A DNA stretch of 64,000 nt from IMG/VR virus record IMGVR_UViG_3300026521_000471, positions 1-64,000 of that record. The stretch is one strand, 5' to 3'. Each line of letters opens with the position of its first letter. Within the stretch, counting starts at the first letter, position 1. The position numbers and the translations under genes are program-made. This document shows, piece after piece, positions 1 to 43,682 of the stretch. The notes beneath the pieces were generated by a model. It was not told the origin of the DNA, did not search any database, and worked only from the letters and a program-made list of their open reading frames with translations.

Positions 1-208
1 TGCTATCACACAAGCAGAGGAAAAAGTTAAAAATGAACTTTCAACAAAAGCTGATTTAGAAGCTGAAAAAGAAAGTCTTGAAAAAGTGCTTATGGAAGTA
101 ATGCAAAAACAAGCTCAAGCACAACAAGCGGATCAACAACCAAATGAAGCATCTGGATACGCTGAAAAGGTTGATGATTCAGATGTAATTGACGCTGAAA
201 TCGAGTAA
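1..208 (+). CDS. dnaK: DnaK (Hsp70), C-terminal end only (gene starts before the window)
   Basis: Frame 2 is open to TAA at 206-208 and ends ...QQADQQPNEASGYAEKVDDSDVIDAEIE, a typical DnaK tail; grpE and a J-protein follow. Confidence 0.85.
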   Translation, partial: AITQAEEKVKNELSTKADLEAEKESLEKVLMEVMQKQAQAQQADQQPNEASGYAEKVDDSDVIDAEIE

Positions 209-210
209 AT

Positions 211-426
211 TTGAGCTATATCTATTTCAAAGATGGGAAACCTATTTCCCATCGTTCTGCTATAAAAATTCTATTTAATCCGTTGTTAAGAAGATTATTT
301 GGAATTGCTATAGCATCTGAAATAGATAATAATAGATTCAAAAGGTATAAGATTATAAAACAAAGTGAGCCAAAAGATTGGTCATTTAAAATACCTTTTG
401 AATATGATTACAGAATAAAACAATAA
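211..426 (+). CDS. hypothetical protein
   Basis: 71-aa ORF filling the gap between dnaK and grpE. Confidence 0.5.
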   Translation: MSYIYFKDGKPISHRSAIKILFNPLLRRLFGIAIASEIDNNRFKRYKIIKQSEPKDWSFKIPFEYDYRIKQ

Positions 427-436
427 GGAGTTAGAA

Positions 437-949
437 ATGGCTACAAAAGTTCACGAAGATTTAACTGAAAATGAAAAATTAGATACAGTTGAAGTGGAAG
501 AAAGAGAGCAACCAGATGCCCCTGATGAAATTACAAAACTTAAAGATAAAGTTAAAGAGTTAGAAGATGAAAATCTAAGAACTCATGCTGAATTTCAGAA
601 TGTGAAGAAAAGACTTGAAAAAGAAAAGTTACAAGCTATCAAACATTCACATGAAAAGTTTTCATTGGATTTACTTGAAGTGTTAGATACTCTTTACTTA
701 GCAGAAACGGCTATTAAAGATGAAAAAGAAAAAGAAGGTATTTCTAATACAATTAAAAAATTAGAAACGGTTTTTAAAAAATATAATATTACAGAAACAC
801 TTTATGATATTTTTGATCCAAATGACCACCAAGCAATTCAAACAGTTGAATCTGATAAAGAAAGTGGTGAAATTGTAGAAGTACACCGTAAAGGTTATAA
901 AATCCATGATAAAATTTTAAGACCTGCTATGGTTTCTGTTGCGAGTTAA
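437..949 (+). CDS. grpE: GrpE nucleotide exchange factor
   Basis: LRTHAEFQNVKKR, LLEVLD, FDPNDHQA, GYKIHDKILRPAMVSV motifs; AAGGAG RBS. Confidence 0.95.
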   Translation: MATKVHEDLTENEKLDTVEVEEREQPDAPDEITKLKDKVKELEDENLRTHAEFQNVKKRLEKEKLQAIKHSHEKFSLDLLEVLDTLYLAETAIKDEKEKEGISNTIKKLETVFKKYNITETLYDIFDPNDHQAIQTVESDKESGEIVEVHRKGYKIHDKILRPAMVSVAS

Positions 950-1154
950 GGAGATGATTATGGAATTTGCTAAAAAGTTTAAGGAAAAGCTTAAAAAATA
1001 TGACGATTTAACCATGAAAGATAAGAAAAGTATTCTCCAATCTAATCTTGAAAAAGTTAAAGGGATTATAACTAGGTTAAAAACTAAAGAAGATAAATTC
1101 CAAAAATCACACCCTCAACATGATCCAAAATATAGTGGTTCTTGGGATTGGTAG
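939..1154 (+). CDS. hypothetical protein (true start probably ATG after AAGGAG, ~954-960)
   Basis: ORF with RBS inside the chaperone cluster. Confidence 0.55.
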   Translation: MRVKEMIMEFAKKFKEKLKKYDDLTMKDKKSILQSNLEKVKGIITRLKTKEDKFQKSHPQHDPKYSGSWDW

Positions 1155-1161
1155 GTAAAAT

Positions 1162-1980
1162 ATGAAAGAATTATATAAAACATTAGGTGTTCAGGAGAAT
1201 GCTACTGAACAAGAGATTAAGAAAGCATATAGAAAGTTAGCCAAACAGTATCATCCTGATAAGTGTAAAACTCCTGAGTGCGAGGAAAAGTTTAAAGAAA
1301 TCAACGCAGCTCATGAGGTTCTTTCTGATAAAGAAAAGAGAGCACAATACGATCGAGTAGGTGATGCTGCATTTGGACAGGGTGGCTTTCATCAGTATTC
1401 TCAACAGCATGCTGATGTAGACATTAGTGATATTCTTAATCAGATGTTTGGACAAGGTGGTTTTGGGAGAGGATTTAAGTCTTCATTTGATCCATTTGGA
1501 CAGGCAGGATTTAGTAACCGACCTATAAATTTAGATAGAGTTATTAGGGTTAGGATACCATTAGAGAAAGCTATCACAGGTGGTAAAATGAACATCGAAG
1601 GTGATACAGTTACTATCCCAAAAGGTGTTGGTCAGGGAACTAAATTAAGAGTTAAGGGGAAAGGTCATTCTCACGAAGGGAAAACTGGTGATTTGTACAT
1701 TCAGCTTGTAATTTCACCAGATATGAACTTTGATTTAGAGGGGAATACAATACATACTTCTTTAACTCTTAATATCAAAGAAGCAATCTTTGGGAGTTCT
1801 AAAGAAATTGATTTGTATGGTGAAAAGATAAAAATCAAGACCCCTAAAGATATTAAGTATGGACAACAACTTAGAGTAGCTGGAAAAGGCTTAAAAGGTG
1901 GAAACCTAATAGTACATGTAATTTATGAGTTACCTAAATCAACAGAAATTAAAGAATCTGATTTAAATTTTATAAAATAG
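1162..1980 (+). CDS. cbpA: DnaJ-family co-chaperone, class B (CbpA-like, no Zn finger)
   Basis: J-domain with HPD ([14 protein letters not shown]), G/F-rich linker, C-terminal domain GDLYIQL; no CxxCxGxG repeats. Confidence 0.85.
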
Positions 1981-4321: not shown

Positions 4322-4663
4322 ATGTACTATGAAACACATATTACTTACAATAAACCTCTTTCACATATACGTAATCTACTACCAAATTTAAAATCGACAA
4401 AGCAACAAATTATTTCTGTAAAAATTATTAAAACTGAATCAATGACAGAAAATAATAAAGGTGTTTATTGTGTATTAAAAGATTATAATTTTGAAACTAT
4501 TGGTTTTATATCGACTACTCGCAAAGCTGCTTATGATATAGCACTTAAACATTGTGTACTTCCAGAAGAGAATAGTAGACTAATATATGATTTTAAAGCT
4601 ATGGATGATAGAAAAGAAATTTTAGAGACAGTTTCTAAAGATTTTCCAGAGTTATTAATATGA
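4322..4663 (+). CDS. small protein with PE-tail (FPELLI)
   Basis: Terminal motif; its C-terminal ~25 aa resemble the next ORF (F.A.DD.....L..(V/I)S..(F/Y)PEL). Confidence 0.7.
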   Translation: MYYETHITYNKPLSHIRNLLPNLKSTKQQIISVKIIKTESMTENNKGVYCVLKDYNFETIGFISTTRKAAYDIALKHCVLPEENSRLIYDFKAMDDRKEILETVSKDFPELLI

Positions 4664-8420: not shown

Positions 8421-8678
8421 TTAAATAAAAAATTCGGGATATTTCTTTATCCCTGTATCTATCAAATATTTATCAGATTTTTTAATAAAATAAAACCCTT
8501 TTTTATAGCTCTTAGCAAGGTAACTATAAAATTCACTTTCTATATTAGTTTCAAATTCTTGAATATTATCAAAATTATGAGTAATATTGAAAACATTTAT
8601 ATATGGTTCTTTCTTATTATCAATATCTATACGTATTTCCATATCACTACCATACTTTAGTTTTATAAACCATTTCAT
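8421..8678 (-). CDS. small protein with PE-tail (YPEFFI)
   Basis: Terminal motif; coupled array. Confidence 0.7.
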   Translation of the reverse strand: MKWFIKLKYGSDMEIRIDIDNKKEPYINVFNITHNFDNIQEFETNIESEFYSYLAKSYKKGFYFIKKSDKYLIDTGIKKYPEFFI

Positions 8679-9037
8679 ATGAATAGCTCTGGAAATTTAT
8701 TAATTAGATAATATTTATTTTTATTTATGATTGAATATTTCCAATCCAAATAAATAGCTTCCATATAAATCAATGATAGAATATCATCTTCCCCTCGTTT
8801 TTTTAAAAGACCTGTTTCTAAGAATCTTTTTAGTCGAATTTGTTTTTCTAATGATGTAGTCTGTTCGATAATATTAAAGTGTTCATCGAGAGTAATAAGA
8901 GTTAGTTCATAGACACTTTTATCCATATCAAGTAATTCTTGCTTTATACTAGTATTTGATATATCTTGAATAAAAGCCTCTTTATCATCTTCCGTCATAG
9001 AATTATACAGTCGTCTAATACGTTTTAAAAGAATCAT
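8675..9037 (-). CDS. small protein with PE-tail (FPELFI)
   Basis: Terminal motif; coupled array. Confidence 0.7.
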   Translation of the reverse strand: MILLKRIRRLYNSMTEDDKEAFIQDISNTSIKQELLDMDKSVYELTLITLDEHFNIIEQTTSLEKQIRLKRFLETGLLKKRGEDDILSLIYMEAIYLDWKYSIINKNKYYLINKFPELFI

Positions 9038-10996: not shown

Positions 10997-11081
10997 TTTT
11001 TAATCCATTTTTATTTTTATTTATTATTGTAAGAATTATAAAAAATGTAAAATAGAGAATATAACTAAAATAGGAGATTAT

Positions 11082-12120
11082 ATGACAAAAGAGGAATTAT
11101 TAAAAAGAAGAAAGGAAATTAAGTCCCAGATGTGGGATATTGAGAAAATATTAAAAGATAAGACATTCGTATCATCAGTTGACTTCGCTTCCATAAACTA
11201 ATGTGGCTTCTCTTGGTAACAAGGGAATGAAACAGAGTGTAAACTGCTGGAAACCCCTAAAGCTCGATTTCCTATTTTTAAAATAGGTGTGAGAACAGAA
11301 ACAATTATCGAGATGACTTAAAAGTGGAAACAGATTTGGGTTGGGTTAATTAAGTTTAACTAAAAATGGGCAATCAGCATCCAAGCTCTCTACCGGTTAG
11401 ATTAATACGTGAGTATTATTAAAGAGAGAAGGTTCAGAGACTATAATCACTCAGTCCTTAATTAAATTTGAAGGATTATTGTATAGTCCAGCGAAAAAAA
11501 TAATTACTAATTATTTCTGTGAAAGCAGATATTTTCGTAGGTACCCGAGCGTGATACGCCTCCTTAATGCCTCTATTGAAAATTTAGTTGGGTTTTTAGA
11601 TAATGACCCAATTGCATATAGAAAATTAGGGCTATCTAAAACTGTTAAGAAAGCAAAAGATATTTCAAAAGAACTAGTACGAACTGATTTACGGGAAAGT
11701 GATTATGTTAAATTTGTAGGTAAGAATGAAGATAAAATTTCATTACGTTTAGATTTATATAATGGAAAATATGCTGAGGCTGATATTACAGAAATTACAG
11801 AAACACCATTTGAACGATATTTTTTAGCAATATTATTTGGTGATGATGAGCAACTATTTAAGTTTCAAGATCAGACTTATACTGCTCAAGAATTTCAGGC
11901 TTTTCTTAAAGAGAATAATTTAAGTTTAAGTGGTAGTGGAGCAATCTATAAAGCCTATAAAATGGGTGATGATAAGAATAACCAAGGTATTATTCCTAGT
12001 TATTTAGAATACCTATTTTTGGAGCGAAAAAAAGTGAAGAAGGTGATGTTTACGCATTACCGACATAAAATTTTATTACAAAAATTTAAAAATGCTATGG
12101 AAGAAGATGGAAGATGGTAA
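11082..12120 (+). CDS. family B DNA polymerase middle fragment, two exons: join(11082..11194,11541..12120), 230 aa
   Basis: AGGAG RBS; splicing restores motif A FVSSVDFASMYPSVIRLLN; GIIPSYLEYLFLERKKVKK is the pre-motif-B fingers helix; no exonuclease, motif B or motif C in this ORF. Confidence 0.85.
11195..11540 (+). ncRNA. group I intron (346 nt, no ORF) in PolB motif A
   Basis: Exon-terminal U in P1 (CCAU/GUGG, U.G), terminal G, P3 GAGTG/CACTC, P4 TGCTG/CAGCA, GTTCAGAGACTA and ATAGTCC (P7); removal restores frame and motif. Confidence 0.92.
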
Positions 12121-12460: not shown

Positions 12461-12690
12461 ACAATTTAAATAAAGGTGATATAATTGAATTTCAAATGTC
12501 CTTTGGAAAACTCCACGGTGTTATAGAAGTTAAAACAGAAGATTTAATACATGTTCGTAGTTTTTCTTTGGATAAAACTGCACATCGATGGTTTATGTTT
12601 TATCAAGAAACTTTTAAACATGTAAAAAATAATTATGGGGCTCAACTTGAAGACGACTTCATTACATCAAATCCTGAGAGGTTTATATGA
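12448..12690 (+). CDS. small protein with PE-tail (NPERFI); start moved from 12358 to ATG 12448
   Basis: GAAGAG upstream of 12448; avoids a long overlap. Confidence 0.65.
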   Translation: MYDLNNLNKGDIIEFQMSFGKLHGVIEVKTEDLIHVRSFSLDKTAHRWFMFYQETFKHVKNNYGAQLEDDFITSNPERFI

Positions 12691-12938
12691 AGAATATATA
12701 TGAAATAGCCAATGAATGTTATCCTATGTTATTAGTACACCCTGCAACAAACTGGGAACAGGAAATTCATAATTATAGAGCTCTAATTATCATAGAGATT
12801 TCAAAGCATTACCCTGATATTCTTGATAACTGTGAAGATTGCGTTAAAGTTATTCAAAATTCTGATGTACTAGAATATAAATTTAGTGATAAATTTATAA
12901 AACGGATTTTAGAAAAGTATCCTGAAGCATTAATATGA
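12687..12938 (+). CDS. small protein with PE-tail (YPEALI)
   Basis: Terminal motif; ATGA overlap. Confidence 0.7.
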   Translation: MKNIYEIANECYPMLLVHPATNWEQEIHNYRALIIIEISKHYPDILDNCEDCVKVIQNSDVLEYKFSDKFIKRILEKYPEALI

Positions 12939-26841: not shown

Positions 26842-28137
26842 GTGGAAAATATTGATATAGGTATTATTGATGTAGAATCTTTAAAAACCTTAAATAAAAT
26901 TTTAGAATCAAAAAAAGAATATATTATAAATTATTGGCTAGATGATGAAAAACTCAAGCCAATTTTTGAGATGTTGGAAATAGAAAAAGAAACATTTAAA
27001 AGCAAATACGCATATCATATTTTTCATCATTTTCAATCCATTGATTATGATAATATGTATTTTAAAACATATATCGATGAAATGGAAGACAAACAGCATT
27101 TAATAAAATATTTTTACCGATTAATCGCTCATCTAAAGAATAAGATTATATTATTTTTAATACAGTATAACATAGATAACAATGATAAAATATTTATGGA
27201 TGATTCACTGCTATATACGATTGATAATGCTATATCTGAATTATTAGATTCTATAACAAAACATCTTCAAAGAGATTATACTGCAAATACAAAAAAATTA
27301 AAGATATTAGAAAATGCTGCATTAGTTACTAGAACTGATAAAGACGGTAGCATATTATTTATGAGCCCACCATTATTAGAGTTACTAGGATATTCAGAAG
27401 AGGAAATGCTTGGAGCAGGTTTTAATAAAATCAGACATCCCAGAGTTTCTTCTAAATTTTATGAAAAACTATGGAGGACATTAAAATCTGGTAAACCTTT
27501 CAAAGGGACTATTAAAAATTTAACTAAGAATAGAAAAGAAGTAATATTTCATACACAAATTGTTCCTGATTTTAATTTTGATGGAGAAATAGTTGGTTAT
27601 ACAGCTATAAAAACAGATTTAACCGATAAAACAAGAGCAAGAACTGACACATTAACAGGTCTTTTAAATCGTTCAGCATTTAATGATCGATTATCTGAAC
27701 TTATAGATAGATATAACAATTTTCATATTCCAGTTTCTTTAATAATGATTGATATTGATTATTTTAGTGAAGTAAATAATAACTACGGTCATATTACTGG
27801 TGATAAAACTCTAAAACATTTTGTTAAACTAATTAAAGAGATAATTAGACCTACTGATACATTTGCAAGATGGGGAGGGGAAGAATTTATTATAATTCAA
27901 AATAATACATTAGATAATTCTATTAAAACTGCTGAAAGAATAAGAAAACATATAGCAGAAAGCACGTTCCCAGAAGTAGGACAAAAAACATGTAGTCTAG
28001 GTGTGGCAGAATTTAATAATAGTTATGCAGATATAGATTCATTTATAAATGAACTTGATAAAGCATTATATTATTCAAAAGAACATGGACGTAATAAGGT
28101 CTCATACGTAGTTAAAAATGGTATAGAATCTGTTTAA
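26842..28137 (+). CDS. PAS-GGDEF diguanylate cyclase
   Basis: PAS (FNKIRHP...LWRTL), DTLTGLLNR, DIDYFSEVNNNYGHITGD, I-site RPTD, active site RWGGEEF. Confidence 0.93.
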   Translation: MENIDIGIIDVESLKTLNKILESKKEYIINYWLDDEKLKPIFEMLEIEKETFKSKYAYHIFHHFQSIDYDNMYFKTYIDEMEDKQHLIKYFYRLIAHLKNKIILFLIQYNIDNNDKIFMDDSLLYTIDNAISELLDSITKHLQRDYTANTKKLKILENAALVTRTDKDGSILFMSPPLLELLGYSEEEMLGAGFNKIRHPRVSSKFYEKLWRTLKSGKPFKGTIKNLTKNRKEVIFHTQIVPDFNFDGEIVGYTAIKTDLTDKTRARTDTLTGLLNRSAFNDRLSELIDRYNNFHIPVSLIMIDIDYFSEVNNNYGHITGDKTLKHFVKLIKEIIRPTDTFARWGGEEFIIIQNNTLDNSIKTAERIRKHIAESTFPEVGQKTCSLGVAEFNNSYADIDSFINELDKALYYSKEHGRNKVSYVVKNGIESV

Positions 28138-38268: not shown

Positions 38269-38524
38269 AGTTATTATGTGGGCTTATAAGTTTACAGATT
38301 CAAGAGGAAATGATTACTATGAGTTTCCTTTTGAAATATCTAGTTCAACATTTCTTAATTCAAATGAATATCAAATAGTAAATACTGAAAGAGAAGCTGT
38401 TAAAGAATTTAAAAAAGCAATTGATTTCAATATACCATATAAAGCTCATTATGAAGATATGCAAAAACTTAATAAAGAATTGGCTAAATTATATCTTAAA
38501 AAGTATCCGGAGATATTTATATAA
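38255..38524 (+). CDS. small protein with PE-tail (YPEIFI)
   Basis: Terminal motif. Confidence 0.7.
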   Translation: MVISRVIMWAYKFTDSRGNDYYEFPFEISSSTFLNSNEYQIVNTEREAVKEFKKAIDFNIPYKAHYEDMQKLNKELAKLYLKKYPEIFI

Positions 38525-38865
38525 TGTATCATTTTAAATTAAAACTTAGAGATATTCACAAAAATGCGTATAGATCATTTTTATTTCCAGAAAAAGCACC
38601 TAAAAATTCTACTAGTCATTGTGCGAAAATCAATTCGTTATATACAGAAGGTTGGTTTGCTGATAAATCATTGATAGAATCTGAAATCCACTTTATTAAA
38701 TCTGTTAAATTTTTTTTAAATGGTGCAATTAAAGATTTAAAGAAAAATAACACTTATACAGGGTGGGATGAATCATATCTTAAAGATGATGTTGCATTTT
38801 TAGAAAATGTATGGAAATTAACAATTCAAAAATATGCGGATAAATATCCGGAGCTAGTATTATGA
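38524..38865 (+). CDS. small protein with PE-tail (YPELVL)
   Basis: Terminal motif; TAATG overlap. Confidence 0.7.
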   Translation: MYHFKLKLRDIHKNAYRSFLFPEKAPKNSTSHCAKINSLYTEGWFADKSLIESEIHFIKSVKFFLNGAIKDLKKNNTYTGWDESYLKDDVAFLENVWKLTIQKYADKYPELVL

Positions 38866-42065: not shown

Positions 42066-42073
42066 TGTAAAAT
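42066..42073 (+). promoter_or_regulatory. class II motif TGTAAAAT upstream of tuf
   Basis: Same 8-mer precedes the polB fragment, parM-like, PRTase, SSB and others. Confidence 0.5.
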
Positions 42074-42109
42074 ATAATATACCAAAAAAATTAAATTTAA
42101 GGATGAAAT

Positions 42110-43682
42110 ATGGCAAAAGAGAAATTTGTTAGGGGTGAAAAACCTCATGTTAATGTGGGAACAGTAGGGCATAGACTATGTGCCATCTCTTGGTAACAAG
42201 GGATTAAAAAGAGTTTAAATTGTCTGGAAACCCCTAAAGCTTCTTTTACTAAAACAGAGCCAGAAATGGCATATGGTATAGTTAATGAAAATTAGAAAGA
42301 AAAAAGAAGATGGAATATGTGGAAACGCTAAGTTCTTTATAATGGGCAATCAGCAGCCAAGTTACCTAACTCAAATATATTGAGATTTCTATGTGAATAG
42401 AATTTAAGGTAGAAGGTTCAGAGACTGTAATAACTCAGTCCGTTAATCTTAATTGAATTTCGGATTATGGTACAGTCCAGACTACAACAACTTTACTTAG
42501 TTAGTTGGCTTATGAAAGTAAGTGTAGTAATTGGTAGATCATGGCAAGACTACTTTAACTGCAGCAATTACAGCAGTAATGGCAGTTAAAAACGGTGCAG
42601 CATTTATGGATTACGATCAAATCGATAATGCACCAGAAGAAAGAGAAAGAGGTATCACTATTGCTACTTCTCATGTTGAATATGAAACTGATAAAAGACA
42701 TTATGCTCATGTTGATTGTCCAGGTCACGCAGATTATGTTAAAAATATGATTACTGGTGCTGCACAAATGGATGGTGCTATTCTTGTTATTGCTGCTACT
42801 GATGGACCTATGGCTCAAACGAGAGAACATATCCTTCTTTCAAAACAAGTTGGTGTACCAGCAATTGTTGTTTTTATGAACAAAGAGGACCAACTTGATG
42901 ATGAAGATAAAGATGAAATGGCTGAACTTGTAGAAATGGAGATTAGAGAACTTCTTGACCAATACGGTTTTGATGGTGATAACACTCCTGTTATTCTTGG
43001 TAGTGCATTTCAAGCTCTTGAAGAAGCAAAAACCGGTACTTTAGGTGAGTGGTCAGAAAAGATTGTACAACTTATGGATTCAGTAGATGAGTGGATTCCA
43101 GAACCAGTTAGAGATACTGATAAGGATTTCTTAATGCCTATTGAAGATGTATTCTCAATTGCAGGTAGAGGTACAGTTGTTACTGGTAAAATTGAGAGAG
43201 GTACAATCAAACTTGGTGAAACAGTAGAAATTGTAGGTATTAAAGACACTCAAACATCAACTGTTACAGGAATTGAGATGTTCCGTAAAGAGATGGAAGA
43301 AGGTTTAGCTGGGGATAATGCAGGTATTCTTCTAAGAGGAATTTCAAAAGATGATGTTGAAAGAGGTCAAGTTCTTTGTAAACCTGGTTCAATAACACCA
43401 CATACAAAGTTCAAAGCGGAAGTTTATGTTCTAAGTAAAGATGAGGGTGGTCGTCATACTCCATTCTTTAATAATTATAGACCTCAGTTCTATTTCTATA
43501 CATCTGATATTACTGGTGCAATTACACTAGAAGAAGGTGTTGAAATGGCTATGCCTGGTGATAATGTGACTATTACGGTAGAACTTATTGCTCCAATGGC
43601 TATCGAAAAAGGAACAACTTTTGCTATTAGAGAAGGTGGTAGAACTGTCGGCTCTGGTATGATTGGAGAAATTATCGAGTAA
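42110..43682 (+). CDS. tuf: elongation factor Tu, two exons: join(42110..42172,42534..43682), 403 aa
   Basis: Exon 1 [21 protein letters not shown] plus exon 2 VDHGKTT; [30 protein letters not shown]. Confidence 0.97.
42173..42533 (+). ncRNA. group I intron (361 nt, no ORF) in the tuf P-loop
   Basis: P1 GGCAU/GUGCC with U.G at the splice site; P10 CUAU/GUAG; GGGCAATCAGCAGCCAAG; GTTCAGAGACTG and ACAGTCC (P7); terminal G; removal restores GHVDHGKT. Confidence 0.95.

What the first reader, a model, noticed from the sequence alone, without database searches (positions are those of the whole stretch)
11046..12120. PolB appears split into at least three separate genes
Seen: the spliced 230-aa protein has its own RBS and TGTAAAAT motif, starts about 33 residues before the motif A Asp and ends after the first fingers helix. 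It has no exonuclease, KxxxNSxYG or DTDS, and no intein-like ends, and its neighbours are unrelated. Established: some T4-like phages split gp43 in two within the fingers. Inference: a more extreme, dispersed multi-subunit PolB. Both ends are charged helices (KEELLKRRKEIK...; KILLQKFKNAMEE) that could be coiled-coil docking arms.
Basis: partly seen in the sequence, partly recalled or inferred. Interest (0 to 1): 0.65.

Follow-up and report, generated by a model that had tools for sequence, protein, structure and literature searches.

The report
Three-gene split phage DNA polymerase
A large phage from hydrothermal vents encodes its T4-type DNA polymerase as separate, scattered genes; the flagged gene is a conserved, intron-interrupted 230-residue middle piece that carries the catalytic motif A, and how the pieces rebuild one enzyme is still open.

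Summary
Window 11082-12120 (+) encodes a 230-aa protein in two exons (11082-11194 and 11541-12120). They are separated by a 346-nt group I intron inserted inside the motif A codons. An intron-less natural allele fixes both boundaries to the base.

The protein is not a remnant:
- At least 68 clusters of about 230-aa homologues exist on contigs up to 496 kb.
- The catalytic residues are invariant, and dN/dS is about 0.06-0.26.
- No close relative is longer than 248 aa (word search) or 234 aa (whole-library search).

It corresponds to T4 gp43 residues about 400-500. Its C-terminus falls where many N-terminal halves of two-piece split PolBs in the library also end.

In relatives, a separate exonuclease gene of about 575 aa ends exactly where this protein begins, and lies 0.56-10 kb upstream. 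That gene is not in the 224-kb record that holds the window (estimated 85% complete).

The only gene with motifs B and C lies 53 kb downstream (genome 64573-65424, 283 aa). It is not a simple complement. It is a thumb-less mini-core with its own fingers hairpin and a motif-A-like element that lacks the aspartate.

So the split into at least three genes is supported for this phage clade. Assembly of the pieces is inferred, not shown.

The parts
11046..11053 (+). Promoter-like motif TGTAAAAT, inside an A-rich context (consensus about AAAAATTGTAAAATA), 36 nt upstream of the ATG.
   Evidence: 27 copies in the window against 12.5 expected. 17 of 40 genome copies lie 20-59 nt upstream of + strand ORF starts. 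Promoter function is inferred.
11072..11076 (+). Shine-Dalgarno sequence AGGAG, 5 nt before the ATG.
   Evidence: Read directly from the sequence.
11082..11194 (+). Exon 1: residues 1-37 plus the first two bases of codon 38. It encodes an N-terminal charged helix and the start of motif A (VDFAS).
   Evidence: The translation equals P0003 residues 1-37. The intron-less allele L016 is collinear.
11195..11540 (+). Group I intron, 346 nt, with no ORF inside. The upstream exon ends in U, which pairs as U-G in P1, and the intron ends in G. It is inserted between the second and third base of the Met codon of DFAS-M-YPS.
   Evidence: Rfam RF00028 37.9 bits, E 4e-8, whole model matched, below the gathering score. 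Exact presence/absence polymorphism against L016 and a DNA contig in run X4. A related copy lies in the tuf gene at about 42178-42498.
11541..12120 (+). Exon 2: the last base of codon 38, residues 39-230 and the stop. It encodes the rest of motif A (YPSVIR), a roughly 100-120-aa clade-specific insertion, GIIP plus the first fingers helix (R200, K201, K204), and a charged C-terminal tail.
   Evidence: Translation. PHROG DNA polymerase families phrog_262 and phrog_2062. Alignment to T4 gp43 400-436 and 450-500. Family invariants.

Best explanation
The gene encodes the middle subunit of a T4-type (gp43-like) family B replicative DNA polymerase. In this clade of large hydrothermal-vent phages the polymerase is encoded by separate, dispersed genes.

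The pieces
- Piece 1, about 575 aa: N-terminal domain plus 3'-5' exonuclease. It ends just after the conserved PGAxV..P..GL segment, followed by an acidic amphipathic helix of about 30 residues. It is seen in relatives and is not in this record.
- Piece 2, this gene, 230 aa: a basic N-terminal helix, the motif A strand and helix with the catalytic Asp34 and steric-gate Tyr39, a clade-specific insertion domain, and the first fingers helix with the triphosphate-binding Arg and Lys residues. It stops at the fingers tip.
- Piece 3, 283 aa, at genome 64573-65424: motif B, motif C and the KKxY element.

How it probably works
- The primary transcript of piece 2 must first lose a 346-nt self-splicing group I intron that sits inside motif A.
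- The pieces are then thought to associate non-covalently. Pieces 1 and 2 would join through the two oppositely charged helices that flank the break.

Shown: the gene structure, the conservation, the selection, the piece boundaries and the co-occurrence of the pieces.
Inferred: splicing in vivo, physical assembly, catalytic activity and how piece 3 fits in.
For: Intron and exons
- Boundaries are fixed by an intron-less allele and a DNA joint, with a group I intron match.

Functional, stand-alone family
- 68 clusters, mostly 227-241 aa and 42-75% identical, on contigs up to 496 kb.
- Invariant D34, S37, Y39, R200, K201 and K204.
- dN/dS 0.06-0.26 for most pairs, and up to 0.48 against the most divergent member where dS is erratic.
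- In a HMMER search of 1.84 billion proteins, only members of 234 aa or less score better than 1e-30. Ordinary PolBs start at E 3e-13.

T4-type identity
- Best solved-structure matches are T4 gp43 400-436 and 450-500.
- The exonuclease family matches RB69 gp43 95-318, E 1.9e-14.

C-terminal boundary
- Many 490-577-aa library PolBs that have motif A but no motif B or C end at profile position about 221-223 of 232, as this protein does.

Exonuclease piece
- 579 aa in the relative G001, PF03104 57.9 bits.
- It shares contigs with piece 2 and lies 0.56-10 kb upstream on the same strand.

Outgroup
- Relatives at 29-30% identity have single 899-940-aa ORFs that match both profiles.

Piece 3
- It is the only ORF in the genome with DTD and K...N..YG motifs.
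- 10 clusters of 277-292 aa with invariant K138, N142, Y145, G146, D192 and D194.
- It co-occurs with piece 2 in this genome, in G001, on the 496-kb contig and apparently on a 52.5-kb contig (listed as the longest contig for members of both families).

No other polymerase
- No PolA or Pol III alpha in the record, but a DnaB-like helicase is present.

Docking helices
- Mean net charge is -3.2 for the exonuclease piece's tail and +2.2 for piece 2's head.
- AlphaFold2 predicts helices 3-31 and 189-227 in piece 2.
Against: - The exonuclease piece is not in the 224-kb record: Pfam, my own profile, phmmer and tblastn all fail. The record is only about 85% complete, so for this genome the piece is an inference.
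- Piece 3 overlaps piece 2 rather than complementing it. It has its own first fingers helix, which aligns to piece 2 residues 190-212 by hhalign.
- Its confident model (pLDDT 89.6) superposes on Tgo PolB 324-637 (Z 13.5, 229 residues aligned). By position this includes a motif-A-like strand and helix whose Asp position is S, A, T, Y or C across the family.
- By sequence piece 3 resembles archaeal PolB (E 2.7e-5), not T4 or RB69 gp43.
- No thumb domain was found anywhere.
- No RNA evidence of the spliced junction. RNA contigs lay on the intron core, and none lay on an exon junction.
Confidence: 0.62

Rival explanations
1. There are two separate systems rather than one enzyme. Pieces 1 and 2 are the two halves of a gp43 N-terminal half, whose true C-terminal partner (second fingers helix, motifs B and C, thumb) lies in unsequenced DNA or is too diverged to recognise. 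The 283-aa gene is an independent PolB-derived protein without exonuclease or thumb: a mini-polymerase with another acidic ligand, or a non-catalytic scaffold comparable to inactivated PolB modules.
For: - The 283-aa protein is structurally a complete palm-and-fingers core and repeats elements that piece 2 also has.
- It is not T4-like by sequence, whereas pieces 1 and 2 are.
- Both this record and G001 are estimated at 85% complete.
- No thumb was found.
Against: - Across 224 kb here and 306 kb in G001, only one gene carries motifs B and C and only one carries a motif A aspartate.
- The mini-core keeps invariant motif B and C residues but has lost the motif A aspartate, which is exactly what piece 2 keeps.
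- The two genes co-occur in at least three, probably four, genomes or contigs.
Confidence: 0.28
2. The 230-aa gene is a decaying remnant or pseudogene of a polymerase that the phage no longer needs.
For: It lacks most of a polymerase, and in this record no exonuclease partner is present.
Against: - There are at least 68 homologous clusters of constant length with invariant catalytic residues.
- dN is far below dS.
- The gene has its own promoter-like motif and RBS.
- The reading frame is intact across a precisely bounded intron.
Confidence: 0.03
3. The split is an artefact: a mis-assembly, a sequencing frameshift, or a gene that is really joined at protein level by a split intein.
For: None beyond the unusual architecture.
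Against: - The same piece boundaries recur on more than 20 independent contigs from several studies and assemblers.
- In most relatives other genes lie between the pieces, and in two contigs a reverse-strand ORF does.
- There are no intein blocks. The terminal extensions are helices of about 30 aa with no Cys/Ser/Thr nucleophile or His-Asn at the junctions (by inspection).
Confidence: 0.02

Closest known systems
Split gene 43 (43A/43B) of T4-related Aeromonas phages 25 and 44RR. The review PMC2988022 reports, citing Petrov et al. 2006, that the two products co-purify and are active.
   Same: - It is a T4-type family B replicase encoded as separate cistrons that reassemble non-covalently.
- Many library PolBs of 490-577 aa that carry motif A but no motif B or C end at the same profile position as this protein.
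   Different: - Here the N-terminal half is cut again, about 30 residues before motif A.
- The pieces are 0.5-50 kb apart, with unrelated genes between them.
- The gene carrying motifs B and C is a 283-aa thumb-less mini-core with its own first fingers helix, not a 43B-type half.
PhiKZ split polymerase DNAP-N (gp82) plus DNAP-C (gp50), with a cryo-EM structure (PMC13648687).
   Same: - It is a family B polymerase of a jumbo phage made from genes that are far apart.
- The catalytic Asp of motif A and that of motif C sit on different polypeptides.
- The complex is interdigitated and is built around an inserted helical domain at the break.
   Different: - PhiKZ has two pieces, not three.
- Its break lies after motif A, inside a palm insertion.
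- DNAP-C keeps the thumb.
- It belongs to a different PolB clade. The exonuclease and motif A pieces here match T4 and RB69 best.
Engineered split of Pfu polymerase near the fingers tip (PMC3061061).
   Same: It shows that a family B polymerase tolerates a break at the fingers tip, which is the position where this protein ends.
   Different: It is artificial, has two pieces, is archaeal, and came from a termination-reinitiation event.
Group I introns in phage genes for DNA metabolism, such as T4 td, nrdB and nrdD, and introns in phage DNA polymerase genes (from my own knowledge, together with the review PMC2988022).
   Same: - It is a small self-splicing-type intron inserted at codons of a highly conserved catalytic motif.
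- Natural isolates differ in whether they carry it.
   Different: - It has no homing endonuclease ORF.
- It sits in an already fragmented polymerase gene.
- A sister copy interrupts a phage tuf gene.
Multi-piece RNA polymerases of jumbo phages (PMC7824862, PMC7598289).
   Same: A core nucleic-acid polymerase is divided into several polypeptides encoded by dispersed genes.
   Different: It is a different enzyme family and a different phage group.

Membership tests
Family B DNA polymerase (PF00136 / PF03104) | Motif A, DxxSLYPS, with the catalytic Asp and the steric-gate Tyr. | tested here: met
   DFASMYPS spans the exon junction. D34, S37 and Y39 are invariant in 47 sequences. It aligns to T4 gp43 400-436.
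Family B DNA polymerase (PF00136 / PF03104) | Motif B (KxxxNSxYG) and motif C (DTDS) on the same polypeptide as motif A. | tested here: not met
   Both are absent from the 230-aa protein. They are present only in a separate 283-aa gene at genome 64573-65424 (KLYLNMVYG and YIDTDE).
Family B DNA polymerase (PF00136 / PF03104) | 3'-5' exonuclease domain with Exo I, II and III. | tested here: inconclusive
   It is not in the 224-kb record. In relatives it is a separate gene of about 575 aa with invariant D125/E127, D218/D221 and Y421/D425.
Family B DNA polymerase (PF00136 / PF03104) | Thumb domain. | tested here: not met
   No ORF matches the C-terminal profile apart from the 283-aa gene. The model of that gene superposes on Tgo PolB only up to about residue 637, which leaves most of the thumb uncovered.
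T4-type gp43 clade | T4 or RB69 gp43 is the closest characterised relative. | tested here: met
   Met for the exonuclease piece and the motif A piece, and unsplit 899-940-aa relatives match both profiles. Not met for the 283-aa piece, whose best matches are archaeal PolBs.
T4-type split gp43 (43A/43B) | Two cistrons, with the break at the fingers tip. | tested here: not met
   The C-terminal break coincides with where many truncated library PolBs end. There is an additional break before motif A, and the downstream partner is not 43B-like.
Group I intron (RF00028) | Conserved core fold that scores at Rfam's gathering threshold. | tested here: inconclusive
   37.9 bits against a gathering score of 50, but E 4e-8 over the full model, positions 1-253. 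The whole-window scan at the gathering threshold found nothing.
Group I intron (RF00028) | Precise excision boundaries: U before the 5' splice site (U-G pair in P1) and a terminal G. | tested here: met
   Exon 1 ends ...CCAU and the intron ends ...GUAG. The intron-less allele and a DNA joint define 11195-11540 exactly.
Group I intron (RF00028) | Splicing at the RNA level. | tested here: inconclusive
   The one RNA run held contigs over the intron core (11201-11385) and one short, diverged piece in exon 2. No exon-exon joint was seen in RNA.
Split intein | N- and C-intein blocks at the break, with a Cys/Ser nucleophile and His-Asn followed by Cys/Ser/Thr. | tested here: not met
   The ends are charged helices of about 30 aa, with no nucleophile and no His-Asn (by inspection).

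The most novel reading that the evidence does not exclude
The replicase of this phage clade is a chimera assembled in trans. A T4-type N-terminal half, itself cut into an exonuclease subunit and a 230-aa motif A subunit, works with a non-T4-like 283-aa mini-core that has no thumb. That mini-core keeps a dead copy of motif A and its own fingers hairpin. The active site would therefore take its motif A aspartate from one polypeptide and its motif B and C residues from another that still carries a structural duplicate of motif A. No such arrangement has been described for any polymerase. A thumb or processivity function would have to come from a further, unrecognised protein.
Probability: 0.3. 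Interest if true: 0.8.

Novelty: new variant of a known kind. Interest (0 to 1): 0.6.

Why it matters
Split family B polymerases are known with two pieces, in T4-related Aeromonas phages and in PhiKZ. Here a whole clade of large vent phages keeps at least three dispersed polymerase genes.
- One break lies about 30 residues before motif A and is flanked by oppositely charged helices.
- The partner that carries motifs B and C is a minimal core without a thumb.

If the pieces do form one enzyme, this is a natural experiment in how far a replicative polymerase can be taken apart and still rebuild one active site. That is useful for engineering split polymerases, and for annotation, because gene callers label these pieces hypothetical or as fragments.

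It also shows a group I intron family that targets motif A of the polymerase and the P-loop of a phage EF-Tu.

Tried and rejected
Complex prediction
- I submitted the exonuclease piece's tail (residues 438-579 of the relative's protein), the 230-aa piece and the 283-aa piece. The tool returned 'no answer', score 0.00. This is not evidence for or against binding.

Searches that found nothing
- tblastn of both pieces against 50,697 phage records found nothing at E 1e-3.
- A single-protein scan of IMG/VR found no relative. Alignment-based scans found only one related record, G001.
- phmmer of exon 2 against solved structures gave only a chance ACT-domain hit.
- The record behind the 496-kb contig could not be searched whole.

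Looking for the exonuclease piece in this record
- A DxE...NxxxFD...YxxxD pattern screen produced only false leads: a NAPRTase-like protein, a glycosyltransferase-like protein and a GGDEF protein.
- The best weak hit, at 103539-104591, is an FAD oxidoreductase.
- G001's region 198-250 kb has no counterpart in this record, so synteny could not place the missing exonuclease gene.

Structure and neighbours
- The stand-alone model of the 230-aa piece (pLDDT 78.9, pTM 0.52) matched only generic long helices, and its insertion domain was not tested alone.
- The 433-aa gene next to the 283-aa piece was considered as a possible thumb. It has no Pfam match and looks like a Pol-beta-type nucleotidyltransferase by motif.
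- ESM Atlas feature hits are leads only.

Step left out
All searches used exon references, the database protein P0003 or the alignment A1.
- dN/dS for the window gene used exon 2 only.

Full report
**Setting**

The window is the first 64 kb of a 224,467-bp IMG/VR virus record. The record is linear, is estimated by CheckV at 85% complete, and has about 27% G+C. Near-identical DNA occurs in hydrothermal-vent and epibiont metagenomes. The phage carries dnaK, grpE and dnaJ, GroEL, an aspartyl-tRNA synthetase, EF-Tu, RIIA and a DnaB-like helicase. No cultured phage is close.

**The observation**

- The frame runs to ...VDFAS and then meets a stop. It resumes at 11541.
- Translated exon by exon, 11082-11192 gives 37 residues and 11542-12117 gives 192 residues.
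- These are exactly residues 1-37 and 39-230 of a 230-aa protein already held in the public collection, P0003. Codon 38 (Met) is split AT|G.

Three lines of evidence show that the intervening 346 nt (11195-11540) are a group I intron:
- The Rfam model is matched over its full length at 37.9 bits, E 4e-8, which is under the curated threshold of 50.
- The upstream exon ends in U, which can form the U-G pair of P1, and the intron ends in G.
- A 7.9-kb contig from another sample carries the same gene, with the same neighbours, without these 346 bases.

A DNA contig in run X4 shows the same joint, 11194 to 11541. Runs X2 and X3 carry the intron.

Of 68 family clusters, 22 lack the canonical DFASMYP motif. 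Most are shorter proteins that begin after the motif A aspartate, and several carry intron-like leader residues just before YPSVIR. So the intron, or another interruption, at this site is common in the clade.

RNA contigs lay on the intron core, with one short diverged piece in exon 2, so splicing in vivo is not shown.

**Not a remnant**

- The word-index search found 68 clusters, mostly 227-241 aa and 42-75% identical, on contigs of up to 496, 262, 261 and 150 kb.
- In an alignment of 47 full-length members, these residues are invariant: the metal-ligand Asp34, Ser37, the steric-gate Tyr39, and Arg200, Lys201 and Lys204 of the first fingers helix.
- dN/dS between members is 0.06-0.26 for most pairs and up to 0.48 against the most divergent member. 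dS is saturated, so these are rough values, but dN is clearly below dS.
- I ran the exhaustive HMMER search because the claim depends on there being no longer relatives. Only four representatives scored below 1e-30, all 234 aa or shorter. The next proteins, from E 3e-13, are ordinary PolBs matched in two stretches: motif A and the GIIP helix.

**What part of a polymerase it is**

- Against solved structures the family aligns to T4 gp43 400-436 (motif A) and 450-500 (GIIP plus the first fingers helix). An insertion of roughly 100-120 residues lies between the two stretches.
- PHROG profiles for DNA polymerase agree. One 502-position profile ends where this protein ends.
- Many 490-577-aa PolBs in the library that have motif A but no motif B or C finish at the same profile position, 221-223 of 232.
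- The review PMC2988022 reports the split gene 43 (43A/43B) of Aeromonas phages 25 and 44RR.
- A break at the fingers tip is also tolerated in engineered Pfu polymerase (PMC3061061).

**The upstream partner**

The 224-kb record has no exonuclease domain. Pfam PF03104, RNase_T, a profile I built from 78 PolB N-terminal regions, and phmmer and tblastn with the relative's protein all fail.

In the related IMG/VR record G001 (306 kb, collinear with this genome over tens of kb) there are three polymerase genes:
- a 579-aa exonuclease gene (PF03104, 57.9 bits);
- the 235-aa motif A gene, 8.4 kb downstream;
- a 300-aa gene with motifs B and C, 21 kb further on.

The exonuclease family:
- It has 48 clusters. 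The full-length ones are 555-630 aa, and none is longer even though the search admitted up to 1013 aa.
- Exo I, II and III residues are invariant.
- It matches RB69 gp43 95-318 at E 1.9e-14.
- It ends with the conserved PGAxV..P..GL segment that in T4 and RB69 precedes the motif A strand, followed by an acidic amphipathic helix of about 30 residues.
- The 230-aa protein begins with a basic helix of about 29 residues and then the motif A strand.
- Mean net charges across the families are -3.2 for the tail and +2.2 for the head.

On independent metagenome contigs the two genes lie on the same strand: 0.56 kb apart with a small reverse ORF between them, 5 kb apart, or 8-10 kb apart. More distant relatives (29-30% identity) have single ORFs of 899-940 aa that match both profiles. 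So the break before motif A is a derived feature of this clade.

**The downstream partner, and the problem with it**

The only ORF in the genome with DTD and K...N..YG motifs is at genome 64573-65424, 573 bases past the end of the window and 53 kb from this gene.
- It scores 30 bits on PF00136.
- It belongs to a family of 277-292-aa proteins with invariant R115, K119, K138, N142, Y145, G146, D192, T193, D194, K241 and K242.
- It is also present on the 496-kb contig, 9.4 kb from the motif A gene, and in G001.
- Its model is confident (pLDDT 89.6, pTM 0.81). Residues 18-255 superpose on Thermococcus gorgonarius PolB 324-637, with Z 13.5, 229 residues aligned and rmsd 4.0.

It is therefore a whole palm-and-fingers core that stops at the start of the thumb, with three awkward features:
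- It contains its own first fingers helix, which hhalign pairs with residues 190-212 of the 230-aa protein.
- It contains a strand-helix element (residues 82-95...NxLYxGI...) at the position of motif A. This position is inferred from the aligned ranges and the sequence resemblance, since no per-residue superposition was available. The aspartate position there is S, A, T, Y or C across the family.
- By sequence it is nearer to archaeal PolBs (E 2.7e-5) than to T4 or RB69, which do not appear at E up to 1, and it scores about 2 bits on T4-like full-length proteins.

The three genes therefore hold each catalytic motif exactly once, which argues for one enzyme. But the third gene is structurally redundant with the second and has no thumb, which the simple three-fragment picture does not explain.

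**Other polymerases**

No PolA or Pol III alpha signal exists in the record. A DnaB-like helicase does. In G001, RNase H sits next to the exonuclease gene.

**Verdict**

The clade does encode its T4-type polymerase in at least three genes, and this gene is the conserved middle one.
- In this record the exonuclease gene is missing, presumably in the unassembled 15%.
- The B/C gene is an overlapping mini-core rather than a clean fragment.
- Assembly, splicing and activity are inferences.
- Literature searches found two-piece split PolBs (PMC2988022, PMC13648687, PMC7824862) but nothing like this arrangement.
- I rate it a new variant of a known kind, with interest 0.6.

Noticed in passing
window 42066-43682: A phage-encoded EF-Tu gene is interrupted by a second group I intron related to the polymerase one (about 42178-42498; 67.5% identity; nhmmer E 1.6e-23). 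Exon 1 reads MAKEKF...GTVGH (about 42109-42171) and exon 2 starts VDHGKTTL (ORF 42531-43682), so the intron sits inside the P-loop codons. A TGTAAAAT motif lies at 42066. Rfam found nothing there at E up to 0.01.
   Followed up: partly
whole record; for example window 4322-4663, 8675-9037, 12687-12938 and 38524-38865; also genome 64573-65424: 36 of 377 ORFs, mostly 80-130 aa and not detectably homologous to one another, end in [Y/F]-P-E-x-x-[I/L/V] at the C-terminus, against about 0.5 expected by chance. The 283-aa polymerase piece ends this way too (FPEYRI). Codon usage at Pro and Glu varies, so the constraint is on the protein. Fifteen of them use a TGA stop, and most of those read ATATGA or TTATGA, which contains an ATG. 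The meaning is unknown; it may be a shared docking or targeting tag.
   Followed up: partly
window 2-1980; genome 121726-123351: The contig starts inside a dnaK gene, followed by grpE (437-949) and dnaJ (1162-1980). A GroEL gene lies at 121.7 kb (phrog_5725, E 9e-145). This is a full Hsp70 plus Hsp60 chaperone set in a phage.
   Followed up: no
window 26842-28137: An ORF with a PAS-like region and a GGDEF-type diguanylate cyclase motif (RWGGEEF).
   Followed up: no
genome 94364-96214 and 114641-116005: An aspartyl-tRNA synthetase (40-42% identical to copies in other large phages), and a protein that looks like a nicotinate/nicotinamide phosphoribosyltransferase.
   Followed up: no
window 11046 and 39 other genome sites: TGTAAAAT within an A-rich context (AAAAATTGTAAAATA) recurs mostly 30-49 nt upstream of start codons. 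It is probably a phage promoter class. The 283-aa polymerase gene instead has TTGTATAAT upstream.
   Followed up: partly
L037:9913-10056: In one relative, a 48-aa ORF that matches only the exon 1 part of the 230-aa family (profile positions 7-39) lies 1.4 kb upstream of the complete gene. It may be a duplicated or left-over exon.
   Followed up: no
exonuclease family (P0269, P0271, P0272; contigs up to 150 kb): In some relatives the exonuclease gene is called as only about 335 aa, covering 53% of the query. It may be interrupted or split again in those lineages.
   Followed up: no
L017:10650-11477: A flagellin gene (Flagellin_N and Flagellin_C) lies on a related phage contig.
   Followed up: no
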